From Octopus bimaculoides (lineage: Eukaryota): a DNA stretch of 60,795 nucleotides. A program made the translations under genes and the position numbers. The notes under the pieces are model-generated. The model was not told where the DNA came from. It was given only the letters and a program-made list of their open reading frames with translations, and searched no databases. The stretch is from the NCBI RefSeq assembly GCF_001194135.2, contig NC_069002.1, positions 8,468,143 to 8,528,937 on the forward strand. The letters run 5' to 3'. How positions within the stretch are numbered: position 1 is the first letter of the stretch; every line of letters starts with the position of its first letter. Positions 1 to 59,624 of the stretch are shown one piece after another.

Positions 1-1459
1 ATATACCTATATATATATATATATATATATATACCTATATATATATATACCTATATATATATAAAATATATGTATATATAAAATATATATATACCTATAT
101 ATACATATATATATTTTATATATACATATATATATTTTATATATACATATATATATATATGTATATATATACACCTATAGATATATATATACCTATACAT
201 GAATATATAAACATACACATACTTATATATATGTGTGGGTGTGCATATAGATGCCGAAGATAGAAGAAAGATTATATTCTTTGTATAATGTCCTTGGGAA
301 TGGCCTCCAGAGTGGGTTAATTGTAGGGGAGATTGATTAGCGCAATTAATTTATACTTCAGTGTAGAAAGCGATGCCACGTATCGTTGAGAATGTAGGAA
401 CGGCAGGCAAAACGGGTTTTTTAAATGCGGGGCTATTTATACAGGCATCATAGTGGTAAAAGAATGAATAGAACATTTTTACCTTTGACGAGGGGACCAA
501 ACTTGGTTTTATCGGTAAGAATCTAGGAACTGCGATCATAACGAGTGTCTAAATGTATTTTAATGTGTTTATTATGGATACAGCGGTCAAGAACCATGTC
601 AGTTAAAATAGTGGTTAAAGAATGAATAAAACAGCTTCATGATGGATATTTCATGTTGGTTGATGGTCTGCTAAAAGATGGAGTAAAATCAGTTGGAGAC
701 AAAATCGTCTTTTATCTGTAATGAGGAGACGAAACCTGGTTTCATCAGAATTTTGTAAAACTGTGTAGCATTGCAGCTGTGAGTGTATGCACAGTAATCG
801 TTGTGAGTTAAATCAATGTTTTCTAAAGACAATTTGCAAATAGTAATGTCAGGTCTCCTGTATTACAATTACGTCATTCAATAACTTTTATTCCAGAACT
901 ACAATACATGACATGAAGCAGTAAATATTTATCCAATGAACTGCGTGTAAGAGATGTTGTCACGAATCTCAGCTCACGCTACTAATGCCTCCGTTATTTC
1001 TTCTCTAAAGGCTCCTCAATCCATTTGATTATGTAATCAATTATAGAATTAACTGATGTTAATTAAAGAGATAATAGTTTATTTTAAGTGAGAACAACGA
1101 GATTTATTTTTAGGGTAGAATAGTTACTTGTTATACAATCATACCTTTCCTACACTGAAATCAAAACGATAGACCAACCTCAAAATTCTTCTGGAAATCA
1201 AATAATTTACTGTGACATGAATGCTACGTATTATTTCTACAAGCACAATACTACGGGCTTCTACAAAAAACTACAGTTTTATATAATTGTACTATAAGCT
1301 CTTAACTATAGAATTCTGCTACAGTCAGATTACTATGTCCTTCTGCTATGGCCTACTACGGTAACAATAATACTGCTAGCGTCTATTATAATAACAGAAT
1401 TATGTACTTTTATTTACCAATGTACTATATACTTCTATATCCACGTTACTATCTGCTTC

Positions 1460-1582
1460 TACTGTAAATACAGCGCCATCATCCGGTTTCTGTGACTGAC
1501 GAGGAGATAACCACTCCGAAATGCTTGCATCTCACAGTATGGATAGGTGGCGCAGCGAGCTGATTTAAGTGTATTTACAGTA
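1460..1582 (+). ncRNA. Type I hammerhead ribozyme with extended stem I (core 1490-1537, predicted cleavage after AUC at 1531)
   Basis: Stem I CTGTGA(1490-95)/TCACAG(1532-37); core CTGACGA(1496-1502); stem II GGAG(1503-06)-ATAACCA-CTCC(1514-17); GAAA(1518-21); stem III ATG-CTTG-CAT; C17 at 1531. Distal stem I: ATCC/GGAT, GCGCCATC/GGTGGCGC, TACTGTAAATACA(1460-72)/TGTATTTACAGTA(1570-82). Confidence 0.93.
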
Positions 1583-1773
1583 TCTATCTACAGCGGAAAA
1601 TTTCTTCCAAGAAAAGCACAGTGAATGGCTTATTTACAGGTCTGAACGAACTACTGGCATATTCGAACTGGTAACAAAATTGCATTTGTAAATACCGTGA
1701 TATGTCGTTCTATCTTGACTAAACTGCGTAATTCTACTAGAACCACTGTACTATAAAAAAATATACTATATAC

Positions 1774-2647
1774 ATCTGCTATGAGTATGTTGAATGTGCT
1801 ACAGCTTGGCCATACCCGCTAAAAGATACTAAATAAATACATTTATTCTTCTATACAATACTTATTAATAGCTGTTATAACTACTGTGACTAATCGTTGT
1901 AATATTGTTTATCTTTGAGCAACATGGACTTTCAATTGTAATTCTATCTCAGACAATAATCATAAATTAATTCAGGATTCAGTTAAATTCACATAAAATT
2001 ACAGAACTAAATCAATTACACAAACTTTACATGCAACAAAATTCTCCAGTTGCTCATTACAACTAACATTTTTGGAAAGAATGTGTAAGTCAAAAATATT
2101 GATCAATATCAAAGACACTGTCGGCAAATTCATATGCAATATATGTTTCCAGAATTAAATAAGTGACCGTAAGATCGTCATATCAAGATCCTACAGTTGT
2201 CCTACTATATAATCATTTAGAGATTTTAACTGTCTCCGATATATCATTAATACGTGACTTCTGCACATTTTCATTGTTCACAAACTTTATTTCCTTCTAA
2301 TCCGATTTGGCTCGGTAATACAGGTCCTAAATCTTAATTTAAATCTTGGTGATCATTTCGATGATCAGGTTTGATGCGAATTCCTCGTTGAGAAACTGAT
2401 AACACTTTCTTCCAGTAGACTTAATTCCGCTCACCGAGAGACTATTCTAACATTTCCAATCTGTTTATGCTTCAGAACACAGAAGAGAGATCTAAAACAA
2501 CTGGAGAACAAAACCCTTATTTCTTCTTGCCAAGTTACTTTTCTCTTTTCTTGTTTGCGTTATTCCAACGGTAAATGATTATTTATCTGTTTGGAGCTGA
2601 ATAATGAAGACTCGGAGATAACCACCTTGCATATGGATACTGGGACA
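1774..2647 (+). mobile_element. Unclassified ~0.9-kb interspersed repeat, copy 1 (adjacent to hammerhead ribozyme)
   Basis: Colinear near-identity over most of its length with the reverse complement of 33137-34018 (e.g. shared CTCGGTAATACAGGTCCTAAATCTTAATTTAAATCTTGGTGATCATTTCGATGATCAGG); no long ORF. Confidence 0.85.
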
Positions 2648-3321
2648 TAGATTTCATTCGCAAATGCGCTTAAGGAAGATATTAATCTCATAATTTACTC
2701 ACCACACTACCACTTATATGAGAGGAATTTAGACTTAGTTGAAAATACTCTTATACGCTATAAGAATATATGTATTCTTTCGAAAAGATGTGAAATAATA
2801 ACTTTCTGGAACGATGTATCTCGAAACAAGTACAGCTAGAAAAGATAGCATGTAGATATTGGGTTAAAAAGCTATTTTGGTAAGAGAAAGTCGAAGGCTG
2901 GTCGTGGGACTGGAACAGCGTCTCTTGTAGGCATGTCAAGCGTTCGGCCATGGGTAGTCGTCGCTTTTTTTTTCCTATTCACAAGAATGTTTCCACCCAA
3001 TGCTATTATTTATAACTTTATCTCCTTCGAGATATACTGTTACAAAGAAAAGATAGCTTTGTCAAAAGTGGCGTTGTAATAGGGGTAAATTTCAATAAGC
3101 TAGAAACTTCAAGCTTTCAATTCCCTGTAGCTGACCTTTTAATTCTATTCTATCCCTTTATAAGATGTAATAGTCATTCAAGATTCAGTTAAATTTGCAT
3201 AAAAAATTACCTAAAGAATTTTCTTCGCAGTCTGTTAAGGTATGGCAATTTTTTGGCCAATTCTAAAATAAATTAGTATTTTTTCAAATTATATTATACT
3301 AGGTAATTTGGAAAGGTAAAT

Positions 3322-3673
3322 CGATTACACTAAACACAGTACATGAATGGTATTTATTTTATCGACTCTGAGAGGATGAAAGGCTAAGTCGATCTCGGCG
3401 GAATTTGAACTCAGAACGTGGAGAGACGAAATACCGCTAAGCTTTTCATCCAGCGTGCTAACGTTTCTGATTTCGTTATTGCTCACAAAGGGCTGAACAT
3501 AGAGGGGTTCAGTCGATTACATCGACCCAGTACGTAACTGGTAATTTATCGATTCCGAAGGGATGAAAGGCATATTTGACCTCAGCGGAATTTGAACTCA
3601 GAACGTAACGGCAGACAAAATACCTCTAAGCATTTCGCCCGGCGTGCAACGTTTCTGCCAGCTCACCGCCTTA
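3322..3673 (-). mobile_element. Two tandem copies of tRNA-derived SINE family A (Meta/MESC-type central domain)
   Basis: Reverse complement of GGCGGYGAGCTGGCAGAAACGTTAGC...GTTCTGAGTTCAAATTCCGCCGAGGTCGACTTTGCCTTTCATCCTTTCGGGGTCGATAAA...GTACCAG; the head contains a B-box-like GAGTTCAAAT. Confidence 0.85.
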
Positions 3674-6269
3674 GAATCTGAAAATATTATTTTTAAAAAA
3701 GGTATTATAGTGAATATCGGAATCAGTCGAACTTCCTACCAACACTCAAAGTTATGAATTATGTATGTAGGAGAAGAGAAACTTCTAGTGTCTCTGAAAT
3801 AGGTGAGCCCAAAGGTAGACTTCATTCTTGCCTTAGTTCTCCCCATGGCAGGTAGATTTTAAAAAAATGGAAACATAATTGTCTTTGTCATAGACCCATT
3901 ACGGGGCCCGGGAACGTATATGAACTCTCTACATCTTTCACACCAGGCAATTTATCATTTACCAAAATATTCAGCTGTGTCACAAACTGAAAGCAACGGA
4001 TATAAAAAGTCATTGCAAATTTCAATTTTCGTATATCAGAGATAGGAAAACAGAGCTGCAAATACGTCGATTCCTTCTTATCTAACAGTTAATATAGATA
4101 AATTAAACTGTAATAAACTTCTTTGTTCATGGAACCATAATAATTTACTTTCAGTCATTGCGCGCTCTATATATTTATCTCTCTGTCTCTCTATCTTTCT
4201 CTCTCTCTTACCACCTATCTGTATTAATTTTATAAATTAAAATCTGGTTGATGTTTTTTCATTGTTTTTTTTCCTTCGTTTTTCATCATTGTCTATGTGT
4301 GCTTTTTTTGATTTGATTTTTGTTGATGTCTCGAAATTAATTTTTCTTTGATATCTCCCCCCCACCCCAGTTTTATTTATCTATGATTTTTGTTCTTATC
4401 TTTCCAGGAATAGGGTGAAATTTAAAGAAATCTCGAAAGTTTTAATGTATTTTCTATTATTTGCTTATTTGAATCAATATAAAATAATTAGAAGTTTCCC
4501 GATTTGAGGCTGAACACGTTCATCGTAAATTTATCATTTCTTATAACTAGTTAGAAAAACAAACTGCTTAGATGACAGAAATAAAAATATATAGCACAGC
4601 AATCTGAGAGGTCAACACTCCGAATTAAGAACAAAGATTACGCCCAACGTAGTGATATTTAATTTCCAAGAATTTTCTATTTCAAATGAGAACATCTTAT
4701 ATCGCAGAATATCTGTTCTGTTATATCCATCTGTGTATGCTTACGAAGATATTTCGCTACTGCTTCTGCCACTTCCCCTCCTCAAGATTTCAGTCATACT
4801 GTAACATCTATTATGCTTTACTCGCTCTAGGACTCTGGGCAAGTGATATAACTGGGCAAGTGATATAATAATAATAATGGTGATGATGTTTCCTTATCAA
4901 CCAATTTTTATATGTTCATAGAGAGCCTCAAATGGGTTTATGCGTCTTTCTTACCTTTCTGAAACATAAATTAAACGAAGAAATTCCATCCAGGAATCGA
5001 AGTCTTCAACTTGAACCAAGTCAAAGTAAAACATGTCAGGCAGTTTTCCAAACGTCTGAAGATGTTTGTATTAGTCCTAGTCATCTATAGCCAATACCTA
5101 ATTGTTGCCTGTCAGATAATCTAGCCCTCGAGTGATTAGATTATCAATTGACACTGCACTCACCCATTCACAGAAACTCAATCTCTCAATGACATCTACA
5201 AATTTAAGAAGGAACAGCACAAGTATAGCAGACGTATTACTCGCCAGTTTCCTGTAACAAACGATCTCATAAAGCAACTTCAATCCTCTGCTTAGCGGAA
5301 GAGATATGAAAGTTGGACGTTAATCAGTTAATTACTAAGTGAGTTTATAGGTTACATGTCGTTGCAGTGCATTGAATTAAAAACAGACTTTTCATGGCAG
5401 AGAGAATATTTCTCTTCAGTTTGTAAAGTAAATTTGAATATCACCGAGATAATTTCTACCTATATTGCGAAACGTTAGAGAATTTAAAGACTAGCTTGAT
5501 AATAGAATTTGTAAGGAACAGAAATTAAACTGGTCTTTAGCTAATGTATATAAGTTATTTCGTGTTAAATCAATTAGGAATACTGGTCAATGGTCAATCT
5601 ATTCAGAAACTTGCATATAATGAATGTCGATAGACTGCCAGTCTGATGGCCACAAGTTCATATTAAGTTAACAGTAAAGTTCATCAACGATCTTCTCCCT
5701 CTTTTCACTTCAATTTTCTTTATATGCGTTTAGTAGGATCTATTCTGTTGAAGATATTCGAGTCAGATCTGCTGTCTGGTGATAACGTTTTGCTTTCATT
5801 AGTGTTGATGTTCTGGAAAAGGTTAAGGTTATTGCACTTCCAGTACTGAATAAGCAATATAGATAATGAAAAATGGAAATAGTTAGCTACCAGAATGAGT
5901 TGTAAATCTCCGAACGAATGTAAATTGTGATAGCGTGTTTACCTTCTCCAATGATATCAGATTAGTAGTGCAAATAACGTAGGAGGGTTCCAAACGAGAA
6001 TCAAATCTGAACGACTCTCATAACTCTTGCTAAAGTACGTTGTTATAGAAGAAAGTAGACTGTGATGGAAATAAGACGAGTACACACACACACGTGTACA
6101 TCTGTCTGTGTGTATGTATATATGTATTCACGTATACATGTATGTATATACCTATATATATATACATATATATATATATATACATGCATAGATATGTATA
6201 TCTATATATATAAAAATGAATAAAGATAGTCAAGAAGAAGGAGTACGTTTAGACAACTATTTAATAAAG

Positions 6270-6627: not shown

Positions 6628-7210
6628 NNNNNNNNNNNNNNNNNNNNNNNNNNNNNNNNNNNNNNNNNNNNNNNNNNNNNNNNNNNNNNNNNNNNNNNNN
6701 NNNNNNNNNNNNNNNNNNNNNNNNNNNNNNNNNNNNNNNNNNNNNNNNNNNNNNNNNNNNNNNNNNNNNNNNNNNNNNNNNNNNNNNNNNNNNNNNNNNN
6801 NNNNNNNNNNNNNNNNNNNNNNNNNNNNNNNNNNNNNNNNNNNNNNNNNNNNNNNNNNNNNNNNNNNNNNNNNNNNNNNNNNNNNNNNNNNNNNNNNNNN
6901 NNNNNNNNNNNNNNNNNNNNNNNNNNNNNNNNNNNNNNNNNNNNNNNNNNNNNNNNNNNNNNNNNNNNNNNNNNNNNNNNNNNNNNNNNNNNNNNNNNNN
7001 NNNNNNNNNNNNNNNNNNNNNNNNNNNNNNNNNNNNNNNNNNNNNNNNNNNNNNNNNNNNNNNNNNNNNNNNNNNNNNNNNNNNNNNNNNNNNNNNNNNN
7101 NNNNNNNNNNNNNNNNNNNNNNNNNNNNNNNNNNNNNNNNNNNNNNNNNNNNNNNNNNNNNNNNNNNNNNNNNNNNNNNNNNNNNNNNNNNNNNNNNNNN
7201 NNNNNNNNNN
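6628..7210. other. Assembly gap (other gaps: 8319-8422, 11212-11221, 14955-14964, 37110-37205, 49586-49909, 53948-54073)
   Basis: Runs of N. Confidence 1.
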
Positions 7211-8286: not shown

Positions 8287-8422
8287 TGTATGTACGTATA
8301 TATGTGTGTGTGTGTGTGNNNNNNNNNNNNNNNNNNNNNNNNNNNNNNNNNNNNNNNNNNNNNNNNNNNNNNNNNNNNNNNNNNNNNNNNNNNNNNNNNN
8401 NNNNNNNNNNNNNNNNNNNNNN

Positions 8423-9197: not shown

Positions 9198-10771
9198 ATA
9201 ATTCCTTTTTAACTGCGGAACTCGCAGTAGATTAAAGTGTAAATATATATTAATAGTAAATAAACATTGGGATACAAACGTCGAAAGGTTCAGTCACTTC
9301 TTCCAGCCAATAACATACGATTTCTAATTTCTCGAAGTTTCTTAATTCCCATGATATAAACACTGTGTGTGTGTGTGTTTCTTTTCTCTTTTGCTTGTTT
9401 CAGTTATCCAGTCTCGGCCATGCTGGGCACCGTCGCGAAGCGTTTTTGTCGAATTAACCAGATATAGAAGTGGACGGTCGCATGAAACTATATATGTGTC
9501 TGTGTGAGTATCTGTATGTGTGTGTGGAGGGGCTTGTATTGTGTGCGTGTGGGGCTGGGTGTGTGTGTATTGTTTACTTGTCCATGACGTTTGCACAGGT
9601 GATATTTATGCCGTTAATATTACTTTTAAACAGTTGCAAATCAACACCTGCAGGAAAGACAAGAGCAGAGGAAATATTCAAGGTGGGCCGACGACATTCT
9701 GGGGAGAAAATTTGGGGAATCCGAAGTATTTTGGGAGTCCTGATTACTAGAAATGACATGAAGTGGAAATTAGAGTCAGGTGTACCTGATCGGGGGGTAC
9801 GAGGCCAACCAGCTCCCAGCAAAAAAAAAGTCATGACTGTAGCGATAGGTAAAAAGAGATGCGGCAGAGCCCCTGGAGTTGAGGGGCTGAAATGAAACTG
9901 TTACTGATTGAATTCTCGTCAGTTAAGAGATTTTTCCGGTGGGAAAAAACACAAATTTCACAACTCCCGAAGTAAACACAGTCATGTGATGGAAGTCACT
10001 ACTAGCTCTCACTTCACACGCAATCGTGTGCTGCCACCTGTTGGTGTGCTTCAGAACTCACCCGGGAATTTTATAATAGCACTTCGTATGTATGTATGTA
10101 TGTATGCATACATGTTTGTGTGCCTCTTTTATTTTTTAATTATTATAAATCTTCCACTGAGGAGGGGGGCTGGTTTCCAACAAAGATACAAGGCTCCATC
10201 TTTGGGATATGTATGTGAATGAATGTCTGTATACGTGTTGGTGTGTGTATGTCTGTGTGTATAAAGAGTGTATTTATGTAATTATTTGGTCGTTATTTTT
10301 CAGTTGTCGCTCATTTGTCTGCGTCCTACTTCCCAAAGTCTCGATCACAACAAATTGTATTTAAAATATGTTTATAGACCTATTCATTTGCTTATATATT
10401 TTTATCTCACTTATATAATTTATTTACTTCAGCAATTCTTATTTCACTAATACATCTTCAAAATTAAATCAATTCCGATGAAACCCTACTTTATTACAAC
10501 CACTGAAAATATCTTGAATAATTTCCAAGTAATCTGGCAACAAGAATTTGATAAGCTGTCTGCTATTTAAGTTTCTTACATACTTAAGAGTAAGATGTAA
10601 ATAGCCATCCAAATAAAAACACGGGAATATCACATGTAGTCCACATGATGCGATGTCACTTGTTGTACTTTGCTTAACAAAAGTTCGGTGATAGTTTTCG
10701 TTTTTATTTTGCTGTTATTTTTGTTTCTTTTCTCCCGAGACATATGGCTGTATATAATTATACCGCCGATG

Positions 10772-12575
10772 AAGGCTGCGAGCTGGCAGAAACGTTAGCA
10801 CGCCGGGCGAAATGCTTAACGGTATTTCGTCTGCCGTTATGTTCTGAGTTCAAATTCCGCCGAGGTCGACTTTGCCTTTCATCCTTTCGACTTAATCCGT
10901 TCGTCTGTTTATGTTTAGCCCCTTGTGGGCAATAAGGAAATAGGTATTTCGTCTGTCTTTTCATTCTGAGTTCAAATTTCACTGATGTCGACTTTGCCTT
11001 TCATCCTTTCGGGGTCGTTAAATAAAGTACCAGTGAAACGCTGGGGTCGACGTAATCGACTAGTGCCTACCTGCAAAATTCCAGGCCTTGTACCTTCAGC
11101 AGAAAGGATTATTCTGCCGATAAAGGCAGCGAGCTGGCAGAATGGTTAGCACGCTGGACGAAATGCTTAGCGGTATTTCGCCCGTCGCTACGTTCTGAGT
11201 TCAAATTTCGCNNNNNNNNNNTTCGCCCGTCGCTACGTTCTGAGTTCAAATTTCGCCGTGGTCGACTTTGCCTTTCATCCTTTCGGGGTCGATAAATCAA
11301 GTACCAGTGACACACTGGAGTCGATGTAATCGAGTAGTCCCTCCCCACAAAAAAATTCAGACTTTGCGCCTTTAATAGAAAGGATCATTATTATTGTTAC
11401 TGTTTTGTTTAACACAACTTCACTGGAGACTGTAACAACATGTCAACAGTGTACAACCATTTAGACTTCGAGAACTCTGCGGAAGATTCTTGCCGTTTGG
11501 AATAAGACTGTTTCCACTAGTTGACTTAGCTTCCCATATAACCCGATCTTTTCAGTCCAATATATGAGCCTGGTACTTACTATTATAATAAAACAAATAT
11601 GTAATTAAATAAATAATAAAGGAAGCGCTATTAAAATGACGAGTTGTCAGGACAAGTAGCACGCCCGACAACATGCTTAGCTGCATTATTTCTAGCTTGT
11701 TACGTTCTGATTTCAAATTCCGCCGAAATTGACGTTGCCTTTCAGCTTTGCAGTCGATAATATAAAGTACCGACCGAGTAGTGGGGTCCACTGGCCTCTT
11801 CCTCTCCAAATGCTAAGGGAAATTTCTTCTGGTTCTACGCTCTGTGTTTAAATGCCGTTCAGGCTAATTTTGCTTTTCATCCTTGCGGTGTCAATAAATT
11901 AAACACCAGTTGACCACTGGGTGTCGATGTAATCGACTTCCCTACTCTTTAAAAAGGTTCGCCTTGTGCCAAAATATTAGAATTTCTATTAAGCTGGTGA
12001 GCTACAAGAATCGTTCAATTGACGGGAAAATGTATTGCCGTATTTATATTCTGAGCTCAAATGCCGCCTAGATCAACATGGCCTTCATTATTTCGTGGTC
12101 GACAAAACAAGATAATAATAATGATAAAAATAGCTGACCTTGTGCCAAAATCTGAAACCAATTATTATTATTGGTTGTTTGGCAAGATCATTAGTGCACC
12201 ATATAAGATGTCTTACTCTGCTTATTTTAACTCTCCTTACGCGTTTCAATTATAGCTGAGGAAGTTTGGCTTTTCTGGGTTCGGTAAAACAATGTTTTAG
12301 CCAAGTAGTTAGCTTGATTTTATAGACTGACTCTTCCCACAATTTGTGGCCTTCTGCCAATCAATGTTAGAAACAATTATTACTATATTATTATTATTAA
12401 GGCGGTGAGCTGGCAGAATCGTTTGCAGGCCGAGGTATTTCGTCTGTTTTAAGGTTCAGAGCTCAAATTCTGCCGGAGTCGACTTGACCATTCATCATTT
12501 CAGGGACGACGAAATAAGTATCAATTGAACATTGGGGTTGATGTAATCGACTTACCACCTCCCGCGAAATTTCAG
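10772..12575 (+). mobile_element. Cluster of ~7 same-strand SINE family A copies/fragments of differing divergence
   Basis: Family motifs recur at ~10772, 10946, 11122, 11640, 11830, 11990 and 12400, separated by short (TTA)n-like spacers. Confidence 0.85.
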
Positions 12576-14748: not shown

Positions 14749-15244
14749 ATACATATATGTATGTATGTATATAGATGTGTGTATTTCTATACACATACAT
14801 ATGTACGTATGTATATATATGTATGTATATATATATATACACACGTATATGTCTGTGGTGAGGATTGTGTGGTGGTGCATGTACGCGTGTCTTTGTACAG
14901 ATGCATACTCATATATAAATATTATTTTGTATGCATATATAAATACATGCATATNNNNNNNNNNTGTCTTTGTACAGATGCATACTCATATATAAATATT
15001 ATTTTGTATGCATATATAAATACATGCATATGTGCATACATATATATCTATGCATGTTCGTACAGAATTGCTTGCACGGATGCTGTCTCAGAAGGTGCAA
15101 AGCAATATTCGTCACACTATTTGTATTTGTTTGCTTCTGACTCCATATATATCTCCTTCCATTAAAAGCACTCTCAGAACCGCTCCGCCACACACATACA
15201 CGCACACAAATATATACAATTACTCTATTATTCTATTACCTGCT

Positions 15245-25061: not shown

Positions 25062-25584
25062 TGGGTGTATGTGTATGTATGTACATATACATCTGTATGT
25101 GTCTGTATGTATACATACATATGCATGTACGTATGTATGTATGTATGTATGTAATGCTTCCTTTTTCATCTTATTCGATTATTTGCTGTAGGTCTGCCTT
25201 TATAATAGGTTCATTAAATTGATATTTGAAATTCCTGATGTCAACGTTGTCAATAATGTTGATGACGGTGATGAAGTTTTTTGGTGGTGGTGGTAATGTG
25301 ATTCAATTTTTGATGTTGCTGTTGTTGTTATCTTTGTAGACATCAAATGATCGACAGCGATTCCTCTGTTATAGAGAGAGTCGATTTAAATGTTCGTGGT
25401 TAGATGTCTGGCTCCCGAATATGTCGGTTTTCTGTTAATGATGTCACTAGAACACAGCATAGTAACACACTGTAGTGCTTCAACCTATTCCTTTGAATGC
25501 TACATCTTAAACGATTGCATTTCACAACACTACACCACCTCAAACAATATCACTTCACACTCCAAGGCGTCGAACAGACAGAAT

Positions 25585-26035
25585 CGTTAGAAACGCCGGA
25601 CAAAATGCTTAGCAGCATTTCGTCCGTCGTCACGTTCTGAGTTCAAACTCCACCGTGGTCGACTTTGCTTTACATCAATTAAAATAAGTACCAGTGTAAC
25701 ACTGAGGTCTACGTAATCTACTTAACCCCTCCCCTGAAGTTGCTGGCCTTGTGCCAAACTTTGAAATCATTATTATTAGCAATTCGTCTGTTCAAATACC
25801 CCCTTGATTGATTTTTTTCTTTTAAGGCCGCAAGCTGGCTGAATCGATAGCACGCCGGGCGAAATGTTCAGCGGTATTTCCTATGTTGTTAGGTTCTGAG
25901 TTTCAAATTCCGCCGACGACTTTGCCTTTCATCGTTTCAAGGTCGATAAATTTAGTACTAGTCGAGTACTGGGGTCAATGTAATCGACCCAAATGTTAGG
26001 CTTTGTGCCTATAGTACAAAGGATTATTATTATTA
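25585..26035 (+). mobile_element. Two SINE family A copies
   Basis: Heads at ~25585 and ~25822, central GACTTTGC(C/T)TT..CATC domain, tails ending in (ATT)n. Confidence 0.85.
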
Positions 26036-33136: not shown

Positions 33137-34018
33137 TGTCCCAATATCGACAAGGTGATTATCTCCGAGTCTTCATTATTCAGCGCCAAACTCATGAATA
33201 ATCCCTCACAGGTGAAGAAAGTGAAAAGAATAGAGAAAAGTGGGTTAGCAAGAAGAAATAAGGATTTTGAATAACGTTTTTGATCTGCCGTTGTTTTAGA
33301 TCTTGCTTCTGTGTTCTGAAGCATAAATAGATTGGAAATGTTAGAATAGTCTCTCGGTGAGCGGAATTAAGTCTACTGGAAGAAAGTGTTATCAGTTTCT
33401 CAACGAGGAATTCGCATCAAACCTGATCATCGAAATGATCACCAAGATTTAAATTAAGATTTAGGACCTGTATTACCGAGCCAAATCGGATTAGAAGGAA
33501 ATAAAGTTTGTGAACAATGAAAATGTGCAGAAGTCACGTATTAATGATATAACGGAGACAGGAAGAGTTAAAATCTTTAAATGATTATATAGTAGGATAA
33601 CTGTAGGATCTTGATATGACGATCACTTATTTAATTCTGGAAACATATATTGCATATGAATTTGCCGACAGTGTCTTTGATATTGATCAATATTTTTGAC
33701 TTACACATTCTTTCCAAAAATATATTAGTTGTAATGAGCAACTGGAGAATTTTGTTGCATGTAAAGTTTGTGTAATTGATTTAGTTCTGTAATTTTATGT
33801 GAATTTAACTGAATCCTGAATTAATTCATGATTATTGTCTGAGATAGAATTACAATTGAAAGTCTATGTTGCTCAATGATAAACAATATTACAACGATTA
33901 GCCACAGTAGTTATAACAGCGATTAATCAATATTCTATAAGAAGAATAAATGTATTTATTCAGTATCTTTTAGCGGATAAGGCCAAGCTGTACCCTAATC
34001 AACATAGTCATGGCAGAT
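33137..34018 (-). mobile_element. Unclassified ~0.9-kb interspersed repeat, copy 2 (inverted relative to copy 1)
   Basis: Reverse complement of 1774-2647. Homology stops at ~34018, so the ribozyme-bearing flank is absent here. Confidence 0.85.
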
Positions 34019-34194
34019 ATGTATAATATGCCTCTGACTACGAGGAGCACATCCTCTTTACAACAGGCCTCTTTTTACTCCGGCTAGGAGTCGAAACCAC
34101 CCTCCTCGCATGAGTAGCAAGCTACTGAAGCGGTGGAGCCCGTTTAGTTGGCGACCACCCGACCATGTCCCAATCCAACTAGTACTGATTAAGA

Positions 34195-34278
34195 ACACAA
34201 TGCGTCCCCCAGTCCAGGAATTGAAATCGAAATCTTACGATCATTGAGTCCAACACCCTAACCACTAAGCCACGTGCC
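34195..34278 (-). mobile_element. SINE tRNA-like head fragment
   Basis: GAACACAATGCG...GAATTGAAA...TTACGATC...CAACACCCTAACCACTAAGCCACG; a similar fragment lies at ~31215-31305. Confidence 0.65.
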
Positions 34279-35614
34279 ACACACACACACATATATGTTC
34301 TGTTTGTTTTTCTTACGAATATCTACTGCGCACTCTTGCAGATATTACAAGTGAGGAGACGCTTCGCCCCAATTGCTGTGTAACCGAAGATTCCTTCTAT
34401 GGCCTCGATCTCAGAAATTATCGCTCCAAGCAATTTACACTTTAGAACTAAACCCCTCGTCTAATACTCTTTCGTTCAGACCTGCATATATATCTGGAGA
34501 TTTCCTCAGATACTTTTCATGATTCTCCGGGTACTTAATGTCGAAGAATTCATTTTGGAGATTATCCTTCGAGAATCTACATATGTTGATTAAGTACTAT
34601 GGATAAAATGTTTTTTCTTTCTTTTTTTTTTTAAATACACGATAATCAATGATAGTTAGGGCAGGGTTTTATTCCGTCTCGTAAAAGAAAATCTGAACAG
34701 TAAAATATCTTGAATTAAATATATGACTAAGAGATTGAAGTTGAAGTCTTATAACAAAGGTACGATGTGGTTGAAAGCAAAATATATATAAAATAAAAAT
34801 TGTGTTAGAAAAATAAAAACTGGTACGAAATGTTATCTTGATAGAAAGCTTTCTTAGGATAATATCAAATATTAGTTTAAAATTATGTAGGATATTTTAC
34901 TTTTGGGAAGAATATTGAAAATGGCTGTTTGTTTTGATGCTGTCAATATATTATAGAAGTTAAGTAACTCAGCATCCACGGATTTTCAAAGAAATCATCG
35001 TTATGTTGACCAAGCACTTAATGCTTGAATGTATTAATACTTGGAACCACTTAAGTAATAAAGATGCACAACAAAGTTAACAGAATATGTCAATATAAAA
35101 TATCAGATTTTCAGAAATAAGAGTCTTTTGATGGAAGATGCATTAATAAGTGTTCAGTCATTCACTAATCCGTTGCAGCATTTGGCCAAATAGGAAAATG
35201 CAAATCAATATACTGTGTGAATAGGTTAAACTTCAAATCTAACATAATCGAGAGATTTTATTGAAAGAAAACAGATGCCCCCTTGGGGCACAGTCGAATA
35301 GAAGAAATGCAGAAAGAATCTGTTACTTTTTATGTTCTTAAAGATTCTCTATGTTATTTTAAAATTATCTCTCAACCAATTTTCCGAAGATTTGATATTC
35401 ATTTAATCTTTGGAGGAGGGTTAATTGACATTTAGTGTTGGAGATGTAAAAGGGTAAATGGTTGCACCTTTTGCGTCATGTGTTCGAATCCTGCTCAGGT
35501 CACATTTGACACTCGTCTTTCAGTGTTCGACGAAGTATCTTCCATCTCTCTATAATTATCTGACCTTCTACCTATGTTATAAATAATTATTATCATTATT
35601 ATTATTATTATTAA

Positions 35615-35716
35615 AGGCATCGAGCTGGTACAACAGTTAGTATGCTGGCAAAAAACACTTAGCGGCATTTCGTCCGGTTTTACGTTCTGAACCCGAATTC
35701 CGACGAGGTTGACTTT

Positions 35717-35751
<35 letters not shown>

Positions 35752-36095
35752 TCGGGGTTGATAAAATAACTACCAGTTGTATATATATATATATATATAT
35801 ACACATGTAAATATATATATATTTGAGGGAATTTGAACTTAGAACGTAAAATCGGTCAAAATACCGCTGACAGTTCTGCCAACTCGCTGCCTTAAACCGA
35901 TTTAAGATATTAGTTTCAAATTTTGGTACAAAGCTAGCAATTTCTTGATAGGGGATACGTCGATTATATCAACTCGACTGACGATGTAAAGTAAGTTCAA
36001 CCTCAGCTGAATTGGAACTCAGAACATACAAACGGACGAAATGCAGGTAAGTAATTTCATCCGGTGTGCTAACAGTTCTGACAATTTGTCTGCCA
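35615..36095. mobile_element. Three SINE family A copies/fragments (one +, two -)
   Basis: Plus copy 35615-35780 interrupted by (TA)n; minus copies at ~35825-35895 and ~35905-36095. Confidence 0.75.
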
Positions 36096-37109: not shown

Positions 37110-37205
37110 NNNNNNNNNNNNNNNNNNNNNNNNNNNNNNNNNNNNNNNNNNNNNNNNNNNNNNNNNNNNNNNNNNNNNNNNNNNNNNNNNNNNNNNNNNN
37201 NNNNN

Positions 37206-38202: not shown

Positions 38203-38265
38203 ATCATGTACGACGTTTCGTGATTAAGAATATAAAAACTACTCTTCTCCACTCTTCAGCATGAT
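38203..38265 (-). ncRNA. Type I hammerhead ribozyme (predicted cleavage after GUA, position 38209)
   Basis: Minus strand reads ATCATG-CTGAAGA-GTG...(27 nt)...CAC-GAAA-C-GTC-GT-A-CATGAT. Perfect 6-bp stem I, G10.1-C11.1 pair, all invariant core nucleotides present, short near-palindromic stem III (ACG-T-CGT). Confidence 0.85.
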
Positions 38266-41749: not shown

Positions 41750-41966
41750 AAATTATTTCAAATTTTGGCACAAGGCCAGCAATTTCGCGGGAGTAGGTTG
41801 ATTACATCAGCCTCTGTTATCAACTGGTACTTATTTTATTGGTCTCCGGAAGAGTGAAAGGCAAAGTTGACCACTGTCGTATTTGAACTCAGAACGGAAA
41901 AGACGGACGAAGTACCGCTAAGCAATTTGTATGACGTGCTACTAATTCAGGCAGCTCACCGCCTTA
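41750..41966 (-). mobile_element. SINE family A full-length copy
   Basis: TTGGCACAAGGCCAGC...CTGGTACTTATTTTATT...ATTTGAACTCAGAACG...GCAGCTCACCGCCTT. Confidence 0.85.
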
Positions 41967-41984
41967 CTTCTGTAGCCTTTACTT

Positions 41985-42358
41985 GTTTCTGTGATTAGAC
42001 TACGGCCTTGCTGGAGCACTGCATTGATGGATTATTTTACTCGAATGAATCGAACCCAGTGCTAATTTTTTTAAACATGGCACTTATTCTATCGGTCGAT
42101 TTTGTCAAACCAATATATTACGTGGACAAACACAAACACCGGTTTCAAACGGTAGCGGAGGGAAACACAAAGATAGATAAACACACACACGTAGATATAT
42201 ATACAATGACGGGCTTCTTTCAGTTTCCGTCTGCTAAATCCACATACAAGGTGTTGGTCGGCCCAAAGCAATAGTAGAAGACACTGGCACAAGATGACAA
42301 GCAGAGGAACTGAACCTGGAACCATATAGTTGGGAAGCAAGCTTCTTGCCACACTACC
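41985..42358 (-). mobile_element. CORE-type SINE family B (Octopus OR-like), near full length
   Basis: Minus strand reads tRNA-like head (GGTTCCAGGTTCAGTTCC), CORE-like CTTGTGCCAGTGTCTTCTACTAT, ACGGAAACTGAAAGAAGCCCGTC, an internal microsatellite, then a CTCCAGCAAGGCCGTAGTC tail. Confidence 0.8.
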
Positions 42359-42364
42359 CTCTTG

Positions 42365-42560
42365 ATAATTTTGGTGCAACGCCATCAATTTGGCGGGAGG
42401 GGGAAATCGATTGTATCGATCCCGTTAATTTACTGCTACTTATTTCATGAAGCCCGAAAGGATGAAAGACAAAGTCGACCCCGATGGCATTTGAACTCAG
42501 AACATAAAAACTGAAGAAAGAAAGCTAGTCATCCTAACGATTCTACCAGCTCGCCCCCTT
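42365..42560 (-). mobile_element. SINE family A copy
   Basis: CCCGAAAGGATGAAAGACAAAGTCGACC...ATTTGAACTCAGAAC...TTCTACCAGCTCGCC. Confidence 0.8.
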
Positions 42561-43482: not shown

Positions 43483-43860
43483 TTCTACGGTCACAGTCTT
43501 CAGGATTTAGCTCCTGCGCGTAATGGGGTTTCCGCGGGCGAAAATTCTTTATGCAACACCGTACGTATTGTTTGTCTTGTTAGTGCACTTTCATGAGCTG
43601 GTTGACGTGTTGACTTCTGTGGGCTGCGATTAAACATTTCCTGCACTGTTGCCACGTTCTCCGCTGATCGGGATGTAGTTGGACGGCCACTTCTTGCATC
43701 GTTCACAGAGCCCGTGATCATTAGCTTTGCATGACAACTGTTCATTGTCTCCGGGCGTAGTGTTGCATGTTTAACTTTCCATGCACGCCTCCAAGCAAAA
43801 CAATGCAATTCCACACTTCATAGTGTACTGCTATCTAAGCTCGCTCCAGCACAGTCAAGG
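43483..43860 (-). mobile_element. Decayed Tc1/mariner-family transposase, N-terminal DNA-binding region
   Basis: Frameshifted minus-strand translation LTVLERA*IAVHYEVWN...HATLRPETMNSCHAKLMITGSVNDARSGRPTTSRSAENVATVQEMFNRSPQKSTRQPAHESALTRQTIRTVLHKE...KPHYAQELNPEDCDRR. The TGSVxD..SGRP, RSPxKSTRQ and KPHYxQEL motifs are typical of this family. Confidence 0.85.
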
Positions 43861-46690: not shown

Positions 46691-47098
46691 ATCTCCCAAG
46701 GAAGAACCTCCAAAGAATTGACATAGATGAATGGAAAGATGTCAGGAAGTGATTCACAGATCATGTCTAGCGCTCGACCTTGTGCTCTCCAACATGCACT
46801 GGTTTTGCTGAAGAAGAACGTAGTGCAGACGCACGAACACGCTTTTGTTTCTTGCACAATCCAGTTTATTCTTTCGTGCCTCTAGAACCTGACACGTGAA
46901 CATAACGGAAGCAGATATTATTGCATGTTGTCCGTAGAGAACTAAGGTCAGCTTTATCTTTCATTCCTTTGGAGATTAAGTAGATATGTACCAGGCATTT
47001 TCTGGTGCCGATTTAATGTAAAATTTCTCCGCTTGACATGATTGATAACTACATGCCAAATTGAGATCATTACTATTATTGCTATTATTATTATTATT

Positions 47099-47310
47099 AA
47101 GGTGGTGTGCTGGAAGAATCGTTGGCCGAAAAGCTTAGCGATATTTCGCCCGTCGCTACATTGTGAGTTCAAATTCCACTGAGGTTGATTTTGCCCTTCA
47201 TCCTTTCGGGGTTGATAAATTAAGTAGCAGTTACGAACTGAGGTCGATGTAATTGACTTATTTGTACCCTTAGAATTTCAGGCACTTTGCCTATAGTAGA
47301 AAGGATTATT
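47099..47310 (+). mobile_element. SINE family A full-length copy between (ATT)n runs
   Basis: AAGGTGGTGTGCTGGAAGAATCG...GAGTTCAAATTCCACTGAGG...TTTCATCCTTTCGGGGTTGATAAATTAAGTA...AGTAGAAAGGATTATT. Confidence 0.85.
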
Positions 47311-49563: not shown

Positions 49564-49985
49564 AAGAGAAAGAGAAAGAGAGAGANNNNNNNNNNNNNNN
49601 NNNNNNNNNNNNNNNNNNNNNNNNNNNNNNNNNNNNNNNNNNNNNNNNNNNNNNNNNNNNNNNNNNNNNNNNNNNNNNNNNNNNNNNNNNNNNNNNNNNN
49701 NNNNNNNNNNNNNNNNNNNNNNNNNNNNNNNNNNNNNNNNNNNNNNNNNNNNNNNNNNNNNNNNNNNNNNNNNNNNNNNNNNNNNNNNNNNNNNNNNNNN
49801 NNNNNNNNNNNNNNNNNNNNNNNNNNNNNNNNNNNNNNNNNNNNNNNNNNNNNNNNNNNNNNNNNNNNNNNNNNNNNNNNNNNNNNNNNNNNNNNNNNNN
49901 NNNNNNNNNCTAACATCTGCCCAGCCTACTTCAATCCCCTCAATCAAAACCTTCTTCTTCCGTTCTATTTTTCCCCATTTTCTGT

Positions 49986-53890: not shown

Positions 53891-54073
53891 AATTTTAATC
53901 TTCGGATTTTTTTAATATGCTAGACCACTGGTTTTAATTGATTAATANNNNNNNNNNNNNNNNNNNNNNNNNNNNNNNNNNNNNNNNNNNNNNNNNNNNN
54001 NNNNNNNNNNNNNNNNNNNNNNNNNNNNNNNNNNNNNNNNNNNNNNNNNNNNNNNNNNNNNNNNNNNNNNNNN

Positions 54074-59159: not shown

Positions 59160-59290
59160 GTCAACTGGTACTTATTTTATCGACCTCGAACGGATGGAGA
59201 GCAAAGTCGATCTCGGTGATATTTGAAATCAGAACGTAAAGACCGACGAAATGGCGCTAAACATTTTGCCCGGCGTGCTAACGATTCTGC
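59160..59290 (-). mobile_element. SINE family A 5' half
   Basis: CTGGTACTTATTTTATCGACC...AAAGTCGATCTCGG...CCCGGCGTGCTAACGATTCTGCC. Confidence 0.8.
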
Positions 59291-59624
59291 CATGTCGTAA
59301 AAATTTATCGAGTCAATTACTGATTTCACGTTTTGGACAGCAAATTTGGTTGATTCTGCGAGGGCGGACAGCAGCCTGTTGTGGGGGTTCTCACGGGGTG
59401 TCTTGTGGCACATTATAAGCTTTGATAATTGGTTAATTATCGTGGAAGACATTCAATACCCAAATTATCATTATTATCATTACTATTGTCATTATTATTA
59501 TTATTGTCATTATTATTATTATTATTATTATTCCGCGTAATGAGAGTTAAAGTTTGGTAGACTTCTTGTACAAACCTCACTCTTTCAGGCTCAATTAACG
59601 GGATATATATCTGCACACACACAT

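What the first reader, a model, noticed from the sequence alone, without database searches (positions are those of the whole stretch)
1460..1582. Complete type I hammerhead ribozyme with extended stem I, G(CUUG)C tetraloop and a possible loop-loop contact
Seen: all invariant core nucleotides (CUGACGA, GAAA, AUC) with perfect stems I (6 bp) and II (4 bp). Stem III is capped by G-CUUG-C. Stem I continues through three more helices (4, 8 and 13 bp). The 5' side of its internal loop (GGUU, 1485-88) is complementary to AACC (1509-12) in loop 2. Established: stem I/loop 2 tertiary contacts enable fast cleavage at physiological Mg2+, G(CUUG)C is a stable tetraloop, and AUC is a permissive NUH triplet. 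Inference: unlike minimal dimer-dependent Penelope-type hammerheads, this one looks competent as a monomer and recently active or under selection.
Basis: partly seen in the sequence, partly recalled or inferred. Interest (0 to 1): 0.9.

Follow-up and report, generated by a model that had tools for sequence, protein, structure and literature searches.

The report
Solitary type I hammerhead ribozyme motif
A complete, textbook-shaped self-cleaving hammerhead RNA motif sits at the tip of a 123-base hairpin in non-coding animal DNA; it is real rather than chance, but it belongs to a kind of ribozyme already known to be common in invertebrate genomes.

Summary
On the + strand, 1490-1537 carries every invariant hammerhead core base (CUGACGA, GAAA, U16.1, C17) framed by helix I (6 bp), helix II (4 bp, 7-nt loop) and helix III (3 bp, CUUG loop). 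Helix I continues through 5, 8 and 13 bp to close a 123-nt hairpin (1460-1582). A covariance model built only from four experimentally validated animal type I hammerheads ranks it first in the window (18.8 bits, E about 0.004). A strict descriptor found nothing in 515 Mb of random sequence. Rfam reports no hammerhead here, but my control shows Rfam's threshold also misses textbook phage hammerheads, so that negative says little. The window is eukaryotic (microsatellites, SINEs, assembly gaps). The motif is a single copy here: no tandem partner, no flanking repeat, no reverse-transcriptase remnant within 1.5 kb. Its architecture matches the canonical type I hammerheads of invertebrate retrozymes. 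Most likely it is a solitary copy or relic of a small hammerhead-bearing retroelement that would self-cleave between 1531 and 1532 if transcribed. The proposed GGUU/AACC contact exists but arises by chance about 4% of the time. Monomer competence is plausible but untested. 'Recently active or under selection' is unsupported. Verdict: a new member of a known kind, of modest interest.

The parts
1460..1582 (+). Whole element: a 123-nt imperfect hairpin with the hammerhead three-way junction at its tip
   Evidence: MFE -45.3 kcal/mol, z -4.8. GC 45.5% against 31% in both 500-nt flanks.
1460..1472 (+). 5' arm of the outer 13-bp helix; pairs with 1570-1582
   Evidence: 100% complementary inverted repeat I3; pair list.
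1473..1480 (+). 5' arm of the 8-bp G+C-rich helix; pairs with 1546-1553 (one U.G)
   Evidence: Pair list and base-pair probability 1.0.
1481..1485 (+). 5' arm of the 5-bp distal helix; pairs with 1540-1544 (the last pair is G1485.U1540)
1486..1489 (+). 5' side of the helix I internal loop ('loop 1', GUUU); the 3' side is UA at 1538-1539
   Evidence: Unpaired in both the MFE and the hammerhead fold. It sits after 6 bp of helix I, as in validated coral and axolotl hammerheads.
1490..1495 (+). Helix I proximal, 5' strand (CUGUGA); pairs with 1532-1537
   Evidence: 6 Watson-Crick bp.
1496..1502 (+). Core C3-A9: CUGACGA
1503..1517 (+). Helix II (GGAG/CUCC, G10.1-C11.1) with 7-nt loop 2, AUAACCA
1518..1521 (+). 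Core G12 A13 A14 A15.1: GAAA
1521..1530 (+). Helix III (A-U, U-A, G-C) capped by the CUUG tetraloop at 1524-1527
1531..1532 (+). C17 and N1.1: predicted self-cleavage between 1531 and 1532 (triplet AUC)
   Evidence: Position follows from the hammerhead consensus; cleavage itself is not tested.
1532..1537 (+). Helix I proximal, 3' strand (UCACAG)
1540..1553 (+). 3' arms of the 5-bp and 8-bp distal helices, with A1545 bulged
1554..1569 (+). 16-nt asymmetric insert in the 3' arm with no partner in the 5' arm
1570..1582 (+). 3' arm of the outer 13-bp helix

Best explanation
The + strand of 1490-1537 encodes a canonical ('full-length') type I hammerhead self-cleaving ribozyme. Its open helix I is prolonged by 26 further base pairs into a 123-nt hairpin (1460-1582).

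Mechanism (inferred from the established hammerhead mechanism, not tested here): when a host transcript reads through this region, the RNA folds into the three-way junction. G12 (G1518) and G8 (G1501) then catalyse attack of the 2'-OH of C1531 on the 1531/1532 phosphate. This leaves a 2',3'-cyclic phosphate on the upstream piece and a 5'-OH on U1532. Because helix I totals about 32 bp, the two products should stay paired, which would slow release and favour religation (inference).

Origin (inferred): a solitary monomer or relic of a small non-autonomous hammerhead-bearing retroelement, of the metazoan non-LTR retrozyme / Penelope-like-element lineage. That lineage is where nearly all canonical type I hammerheads of invertebrate genomes reside. 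A single copy cannot make circular RNA, so at this locus the ribozyme would only cut whatever transcript contains it.
For: - **Core and helices:** every invariant core base and all three helices are present without a mismatch.
- **Independent model:** covariance model R1, built only from four experimentally validated animal type I hammerheads (PMC7229834 Suppl. Table 2), puts 1490-1537 first in the window. The match is full length, 18.8 bits, E about 0.004, with filters off or on. The same model finds bona fide phage hammerheads at 17.9-34.8 bits.
- **Descriptor null:** 0 strict hits in 515 Mb of random sequence and 0.005-0.009 relaxed hits per window.
- **Helix I extension:** -33.3 kcal/mol, in the top 0.24% of flank pairs in the window.
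- **Energetics:** the hammerhead fold is within 2.6 kcal/mol of the MFE.
- **Architecture:** 6-bp helix I, then an asymmetric internal loop, then a distal helix; 4-bp helix II with a 5-7 nt loop; 2-3 bp helix III with a tetraloop; low-GC surroundings. This matches the validated coral, mussel and axolotl retrozyme hammerheads.
- **Solitary copies are known:** dispersed monomer copies of retrozymes, and families with consensus lengths from 51 bp upward, are documented (bioRxiv 10.64898/2026.07.22.740005).
- **Composition:** the element is a GC-richer island (45.5% against 31%), as expected for an inserted structured element.
Against: - **No relatives:** there is no second copy in 60.8 kb, no tandem partner and no significant similarity between the flanks.
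- **No retroelement remnant:** no reverse-transcriptase or GIY-YIG remnant, or any other Pfam domain, in six frames of 240-3299. No pol III boxes or tRNA-like head nearby.
- **Rfam:** RF00163 does not report it even at E<=10 on a 71-nt search. The control weakens this result.
- **Differences from the validated examples:** helix III is marginal in nearest-neighbour terms (pair probability 0.03). The tetraloop CUUG is not palindromic, and the triplet is AUC rather than GUC.
- **Untested:** no transcription, cleavage, copy-number or conservation data could be obtained, because no eukaryotic genome collection was available.
Confidence: 0.6

Rival explanations
1. A host-retained ('domesticated') single-copy hammerhead. 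It would lie in an intron, UTR or long non-coding RNA and be kept because cleavage or religation of that transcript is useful, like the amniote intronic hammerheads (RECK, CTCL, DTNB) or the rodent Clec2 3'UTR hammerhead.
For: It is a single copy in the window with no transposon hallmarks around it. All 39 base pairs and the core are intact. Such domesticated type I hammerheads exist and resemble retroelement ones (PMC6155905).
Against: No gene, exon or orthologue could be identified: no Pfam hit, and none of the 12 window ORFs looked up, by exact sequence, is on record in the protein collection. Intactness of one copy cannot separate youth from constraint. Retrozyme monomers are common and are found in both intergenic and intronic regions.
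Confidence: 0.15
2. A foldback or MITE-like DNA element. On this view the 123-nt hairpin reflects terminal inverted repeats of a small DNA transposon (TA | CTGTAAATACA ... TGTATTTACAG | TA), and the hammerhead in its centre is a passenger or a coincidence.
For: There is a perfect 13-bp terminal inverted repeat. TA dinucleotides sit at both ends, and a 6-nt direct repeat CTATCT lies near both ends (1449-1454 and 1584-1589). The window contains a mariner-like transposase fragment at 43503-43817.
Against: No second copy in the window. The complementarity is not confined to the termini: it runs continuously into helix I of the ribozyme, which is what RNA-level structure predicts. TA and a 6-mer repeat are weak evidence in 31%-GC DNA. 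The validated retrozyme hammerheads show the same helix I extension.
Confidence: 0.1
3. A chance look-alike: an inverted repeat in AT-rich DNA that happens to contain the 11 core bases, with no catalytic activity and no hammerhead ancestry.
For: Large genomes are expected to hold a handful of strict descriptor matches by chance; extrapolating from 7 'mid' hits in 515 Mb gives roughly 10 per 5 Gb searched. The finding was picked from many windows. Rfam gives no hit.
Against: A strict motif (fewer than about 2e-4 per window) combined with a flank duplex in the top 0.24% gives roughly 1e-6 per window, or a few hundredths per genome. The geometry of internal loop and loop 2 matches natural type I hammerheads. 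A second, weaker hammerhead-like motif in the same window (38203-38265, minus strand) suggests this genome carries hammerhead-derived sequence.
Confidence: 0.08

Closest known systems
Canonical type I hammerheads of metazoan non-LTR retrozymes (coral Acropora millepora Amil224, mussel Mytilus galloprovincialis Mg353; Cervera & de la Pena 2020, PMC7229834)
   Same: Type I topology. Core CUGANGA / GAAAY / RUH. Helix I of 6 bp followed by an asymmetric internal loop and a distal helix. 4-bp helix II with a 5-7 nt loop. Helix III of 2-3 bp capped by a tetraloop. AT-rich genomic setting. The motif matches a covariance model built from these sequences.
   Different: It is solitary, not in a 150-450 bp tandem array. 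The tetraloop CUUG is thermodynamically stable and non-palindromic, whereas the validated ones are GUAC, GCGC, ACGU and CAUG. It has GAAAU...AUC instead of GAAAC...GUH. The helix I extension is much longer and more stable (26 bp). No primary-sequence similarity outside the core.
Schistosoma mansoni Sm-alpha hammerhead and Rfam family RF00163 (Hammerhead_1)
   Same: The secondary-structure shape is the same as the RF00163 consensus printed: 6-bp helix I, 4-bp helix II, 3-bp helix III. Position 7 is also C, as in that consensus.
   Different: The stem sequences differ (GGAG/CUCC against GUCC/GGAC; AUG/CAU against ACG/CGU) and loop 2 differs. RF00163 gives no reportable score. No SINE-like pol III head is present.
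Minimal hammerheads of Penelope-like elements and Terminons
   Same: Type I topology, animal genome, and probably a related evolutionary lineage.
   Different: Those usually lack helix III and tertiary contacts and act as dimers (PMC6155905). This one has a 3-bp helix III plus a stable tetraloop and a helix I internal loop. No reverse transcriptase or GIY-YIG coding remnant lies nearby.
Amniote intronic hammerheads (HH9/HH10: RECK, CTCL, DTNB) and the rodent Clec2 3'UTR hammerhead
   Same: A single genomic copy of a type I hammerhead with an extended helix I, embedded in host non-coding sequence (PMC6155905).
   Different: Those are defined by deep conservation at orthologous loci, which could not be examined here. 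The taxon is also different (this is an invertebrate-like genome).

Membership tests
Hammerhead ribozyme (any type) | Conserved core C3 U4 G5 A6 N7 G8 A9 ... G12 A13 A14 A15.1 ... U16.1 H17 | tested here: met
   CUGACGA 1496-1502, GAAA 1518-1521, U1530, C1531.
Hammerhead ribozyme (any type) | Three helices radiating from the core, with pairs 10.1-11.1 and 15.1-16.1 formed | tested here: met
   Helix I 6 bp, helix II 4 bp (G1503-C1517), helix III 3 bp (A1521-U1530), all standard pairs. Published filter GAAAY/RUH met: GAAAU/AUC.
Hammerhead ribozyme (any type) | Site-specific self-cleavage 3' of H17, abolished by core mutations | not testable with these tools
   Needs in vitro transcription or RNA end mapping.
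Hammerhead ribozyme (any type) | Significant match to a covariance model of known hammerheads | tested here: met
   R1, built from 4 validated animal type I hammerheads: 18.8 bits, E about 0.004, full length, best hit in the window. R1 recovers phage hammerheads at 17.9-34.8 bits.
Rfam RF00163 Hammerhead_1 | Score at or above the gathering cut-off of 34 bits | tested here: inconclusive
   No hammerhead hit at gathering or at E<=10. In the control, 8 phage loci carrying textbook hammerheads also gave no hit at gathering, and one of them scores 30.5 bits, below 34. The cut-off is therefore too narrow to decide.
Type I hammerhead | Helix I open-ended; helices II and III closed by loops | tested here: met
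   Loop 2 at 1507-1513 and loop 3 at 1524-1527; the helix I strands are 1490-1495 and 1532-1537.
Canonical ('full') type I hammerhead | Internal loop in helix I placed to contact loop 2 (tertiary interaction) | tested here: inconclusive
   The geometry is met: the internal loop GUUU/UA sits after 6 bp, as in coral and axolotl. The conserved non-canonical contacts cannot be read from a single sequence. GGUU/AACC complementarity arises by chance with P about 0.04.
Metazoan non-LTR retrozyme | Tandem repeats of about 150-450 bp, each carrying one type I hammerhead | tested here: not met
   No second copy in the window and no significant flank-flank similarity. Only a solitary-monomer derivative remains possible.
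Metazoan non-LTR retrozyme | Low GC content (<45-50%) and expression as linear and circular RNA | tested here: inconclusive
   GC is 45.5% for the element and 31% for the flanks. Expression is not testable.
Penelope-like element pLTR hammerhead | Minimal hammerhead in a pseudo-LTR next to an RT / GIY-YIG ORF | tested here: not met
   Helix III is present, and no Pfam domain appears in six frames of 240-3299. More distant or deleted coding parts are not excluded; the window begins 1.46 kb upstream.
Domesticated intronic/UTR hammerhead | Conservation at the orthologous locus across species | not testable with these tools
   No eukaryotic genome collection was available. Exact ORF look-ups failed. 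Viral, metagenome and prokaryote scans were empty or gave chance hits.

The most novel reading that the evidence does not exclude
This would be a single-copy hammerhead retained by an invertebrate host, in an intron or long non-coding RNA. Its long helix I would keep the cleavage products together, and it would use a Watson-Crick kissing contact (GGUU 1485-1488 with AACC 1509-1512) of the kind so far described for type II hammerheads. That would make it an invertebrate counterpart of the amniote intronic hammerheads. Alternatively, it is the monomer of an unusually small (about 125-nt) retrozyme family.
Probability: 0.12. Interest if true: 0.5.

Novelty: new member of a known kind. Interest (0 to 1): 0.27.

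Why it matters
If it cleaves, it adds one more canonical type I hammerhead to the many already catalogued in invertebrate genomes, and that by itself changes little. Two points have some practical value. First, Rfam's hammerhead models at their gathering cut-offs missed both this motif and every hammerhead in the phage control, so routine Rfam annotation undercounts hammerheads. Descriptor searches or broader models are needed. Second, a solitary, fully intact hammerhead with a stable non-palindromic helix III cap and a 32-bp helix I would be a convenient natural test case for monomeric cleavage against religation. If it proved conserved, it would also be a candidate domesticated ribozyme outside the amniotes.

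Tried and rejected
- **Rfam scans** of the whole window at gathering threshold, and of 351-nt and 71-nt stretches at E<=10, gave no hammerhead. I did not take this as evidence against the motif, because the positive control failed in the same way.
- **A second copy or tandem unit** was sought with blastn at word size 7, the repeat finder, TRF and flank-flank local alignments with shuffles. Nothing was significant.
- **The inverted segmental duplication** 1763-2647 / 34029-33137 was tested as an 'empty site' comparison. Homology stops 180 nt downstream of the element; the upstream alignment scores 108 against a null maximum of 99, so it is uninformative.
- **Relatives elsewhere** were sought with exact and degenerate patterns. 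Viral contigs gave 0 and 0; metagenomes gave 0 and then 3 hits, all coding-like chance matches without helices I or III; prokaryotic genomes gave 0.
- **Orthologous loci through ORFs** could not be retrieved: none of the 12 window ORFs looked up, by exact sequence, is in the protein collection.
- **Organism identification** failed. The mariner-like fragment gave one anonymous hit and the SINE strings are in no paper. My recollection that the SINE looks cephalopod remains unverified.
- **Coding or retroelement remnants** were not found: Pfam on six frames of 240-3299 and on four other ORFs gave nothing meaningful.
- **Pol III boxes and tRNA-like sequences** were absent.
- **The weak match at 2605-2639** (GGAGATAACCAC plus flanking words) was considered as a decayed sister copy. 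It scores 30, reached by 5 of 1437 null pieces, which is about what the whole window would give by chance, so it is not claimed.
- **Translated hammerhead frame search:** I ran no further search on this, because the exact look-ups showed that ORFs of this genome are not in that collection.

Full report
**What is in the sequence**

Read on the + strand, 1490-1537 is CUGUGA-CUGACGA-GGAG-AUAACCA-CUCC-GAAA-UG-CUUG-CA-U-C-UCACAG. This is the hammerhead consensus in type I order:
- Helix I, 5' strand: 1490-1495.
- Core C3-A9: CUGACGA, 1496-1502.
- Helix II: GGAG/CUCC with G10.1-C11.1, capped by the 7-nt loop AUAACCA.
- Core G12-A15.1: GAAA, 1518-1521.
- Helix III: A1521-U1530, U1522-A1529, G1523-C1528, capped by CUUG.
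- C17: 1531.
- Helix I, 3' strand: 1532-1537.

All 13 pairs are Watson-Crick. Helix I is followed by an asymmetric internal loop (GUUU 1486-1489 / UA 1538-1539). It then continues through helices of 5 bp (one G.U), 8 bp (one U.G) and 13 bp to the ends 1460/1582. A 16-nt unpaired insert (1554-1569) sits in the 3' arm. The only difference is that the '4 bp' helix is 4 Watson-Crick pairs plus a G.U pair.

**Is it more than chance?**

I wrote a hammerhead descriptor: core, contiguous helices with G.U allowed, and loop limits. On the real window, both strands, it gives two hits, this one and a weaker one at 38203-38265 on the minus strand.
- In 400 first-order Markov windows, the relaxed form (I>=4, II>=3, III>=2 bp) occurs 0.005 times per window.
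- In 515 Mb of composition-matched random sequence there were 40 relaxed hits, 7 intermediate hits, and no hit of the strict form seen here (I>=6, II>=4, III>=3).
- Extrapolation still allows roughly ten strict matches by chance in a multi-gigabase genome, so the core motif alone is not proof for a finding picked from many windows.
- The helix I extension adds independent information. The duplex between 1460-1489 and 1538-1582 is -33.3 kcal/mol, and only 7 of 2901 equally spaced flank pairs in this window (mostly microsatellite palindromes) do as well.
- The whole 123-nt fold has z = -4.8 against dinucleotide shuffles.

Together these put the chance expectation at a few hundredths per genome.

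**Test against known hammerheads**

Rfam reports no hammerhead: none at gathering thresholds for the whole window, and none at E<=10 for 351 nt or 71 nt around the motif. Before using that result as evidence, I ran a control.
- A pattern scan of viral contigs returned at least 120 loci with CUGAUGAGUCC...GGACGAAAC.
- Eight of these loci, scanned at gathering threshold, gave tRNAs and a twister-P5 ribozyme but no hammerhead.
- One of them (L037 579-627) is a textbook hammerhead lying between tRNA genes. It scores 30.5 bits against RF00163, whose cut-off is 34.

The library therefore does contain the hammerhead models, but their cut-offs and sequence-specific stems miss clear hammerheads. The negative for the window is uninformative.

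As an independent test I took the four experimentally validated animal type I hammerheads printed in Supplementary Table 2 of Cervera & de la Pena 2020 (coral Amil224, mussel Mg353, axolotl Ax353 and Ax330). I aligned them and built covariance model R1 with the textbook structure.
- With filters off, R1 ranks 1490-1537 first in the window: full length, 18.8 bits, E about 0.004 with rough calibration.
- The hit survives default filters.
- The same model recovers phage hammerheads at 17.9-34.8 bits, including ones that lack my search pattern. It therefore generalises, and the window motif scores at the low end of the range for real hammerheads.

**Energetics**

The explicit hammerhead fold of the 123-nt RNA is -42.7 kcal/mol, against an MFE of -45.3. 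The competing structure re-pairs part of the core, as is usual because nearest-neighbour models do not credit the core's non-canonical pairs. Helices I and the three extensions have pair probability about 1.0, helix II 0.56 and helix III 0.03. Helix III is thus intrinsically marginal, as in other animal type I hammerheads.

**Context**

The window is eukaryotic. It has 34% GC, abundant TA/TG microsatellites, seven runs of N, many copies of tRNA-derived SINEs and a mariner-like transposase fragment. I could not verify the species.

Around the motif there is:
- no ORF of note;
- no Pfam domain in any frame of 240-3299;
- no tRNA or pol III box;
- no tandem repeat, and no significant similarity between the upstream and downstream flanks.

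The element is a GC-richer island, 45.5% against 31%. An inverted segmental duplication (1763-2647 against 34029-33137, 90% identity) begins 180 nt downstream and does not include the element. No other copy of the element exists in the window. No relative was found in viral, metagenomic or prokaryotic collections. No eukaryotic genome collection was available, and the route through ORF look-ups failed. Copy number, age and conservation therefore remain unknown.

**Comparison with what is known**

Canonical type I hammerheads are widespread in animal genomes. Most sit in short tandem repeats now called non-LTR retrozymes, and minimal variants sit in Penelope-like elements (PMC7229834; PMC6155905; PMC8557442). 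A 2026 preprint reports that retrozymes derive from the terminal regions of Penelope-like elements. It also reports that dispersed monomer copies are common and that consensus lengths run from 51 to 972 bp.

The present motif has the architecture of the invertebrate retrozyme hammerheads:
- 6-bp helix I, then an internal loop, then a distal helix;
- 4-bp helix II with a small loop;
- helix III of 2-3 bp with a tetraloop.

According to that literature, this form cleaves efficiently as a monomer, unlike amphibian hammerheads with a 1-bp helix III. It differs from the validated examples in several ways:
- it is solitary;
- its cap is the stable, non-palindromic CUUG tetraloop (the four validated examples all have palindromic tetraloops);
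- it has GAAAU...AUC rather than GAAAC...GUH, which is still within the published GAAAY/RUH filter;
- its helix I extension is unusually long.

It fails the defining tandem-repeat feature of a retrozyme and the RT-adjacent, helix-III-less features of Penelope-like-element hammerheads. I therefore file it as a hammerhead of type I and only infer a retroelement origin.

**The proposed loop-loop contact**

GGUU (1485-1488) is antiparallel-complementary to AACC (1509-1512). Three things weaken it as evidence:
- complementarity of at least 4 nt between loops of 5 and 7 nt arises in 4.1% of random trials at this composition;
- G1485 is otherwise engaged in the closing G.U pair;
- type I hammerheads are described as using reverse-Hoogsteen and other non-canonical contacts, whereas Watson-Crick contacts are typical of type II.

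It is a testable idea, not a finding.

**Mechanism and verdict**

Most likely (0.6) this is a genuine, probably active, canonical type I hammerhead that is a solitary copy or relic of a small hammerhead-bearing retroelement. If transcribed, it would cut its transcript between C1531 and U1532. The long helix I would hold the products together and favour religation; this last step is inference.

The rivals are:
- a host-domesticated single-copy ribozyme (0.15);
- a foldback or MITE-like DNA element carrying the motif (0.10);
- a chance look-alike (0.08).

The finding is a new member of a well-known kind. It is neither surprising to a specialist nor a route to an open question, unless conservation or an unusual tertiary contact is later shown.

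Noticed in passing
window 38203-38265 (minus strand): A second hammerhead-like motif: AUCAUG-CUGAAGA-[33-nt AU-rich helix II with an internal loop]-GAAA-C-GUC-G-U-A-CAUGAU. The core is complete, helix I is 6 bp and helix III is 2 bp plus a 3-nt loop. R1 gives 16 bits, E about 0.03. It is the only other descriptor hit in the window (0.005-0.009 expected per window). However, there is no thermodynamic support (z = -0.29), no repeat context and no Pfam hit. It may be a decayed minimal, Penelope-like-element-style hammerhead or a chance match.
   Followed up: partly
window 2605-2639, and its paralogue at about 33150-33190 (minus strand): TGAAGACTCGGAGATAACCACCTTGCATATGGATA shares a 12-mer (GGAGATAACCAC) and collinear words with the hammerhead (TGA.GA / GGAGATAACCAC / CTTGCA / TATGGATA) but lacks GAAA and helix I. 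The local score of 30 is reached by 5 of 1437 null pieces, so it is not significant window-wide. It lies inside the duplicated segment, so it predates the duplication.
   Followed up: partly
window 1763-2647 against 34029-33137, and 4009-4558 against 31815-31312: An inverted segmental duplication about 30 kb apart (90% and 75% identity). The distal copy is interrupted just upstream by a tRNA-derived SINE at about 34030-34290.
   Followed up: partly
window 1449-1454 and 1584-1589: A 6-nt direct repeat, CTATCT, lies 5 nt before and 1 nt after the hairpin, and TA dinucleotides form both hairpin ends. This could be a target-site duplication, but the evidence is weak in 31%-GC DNA.
   Followed up: no
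window 3321-3673, 10757-12560, 25540-25990, 35630-36083, 41825-42507, 47098-47260, 59166-59292: Many diverged copies (68-90% identity) of one tRNA-derived SINE family (core GAGTTCAAATTCCGCCGAGGTCGACTTTGCCTTTCATCC). From memory it resembles cephalopod SINEs, but this is unverified: the strings occur in no searchable paper.
   Followed up: partly
window 43503-43817 (minus strand): A mariner/Tc1-like transposase N-terminal fragment (…RSGRPTTSRSAENVATVQEMFNRSPQKSTRQ…). Its only database relative is one anonymous Logan protein at 64% identity, and there is no Pfam hit.
   Followed up: partly
window 6628-7210, 8319-8422, 11212-11221, 14955-14964, 37110-37205, 49586-49909, 53948-54073: Runs of N (assembly gaps), several next to microsatellites. 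The window comes from a draft-quality scaffold.
   Followed up: no
L037 579-627; L066 1336-6896; L011 2403-3881; L046 132-180 and 1199-1253: These phage contigs were fetched as controls. L037 has a hammerhead between tRNA genes in an 11-tRNA array. L066 has an array of at least 9 hammerheads and L011 has 4. L046 has a hammerhead plus a twister-P5 ribozyme. Rfam at gathering thresholds reported none of the hammerheads.
   Followed up: partly
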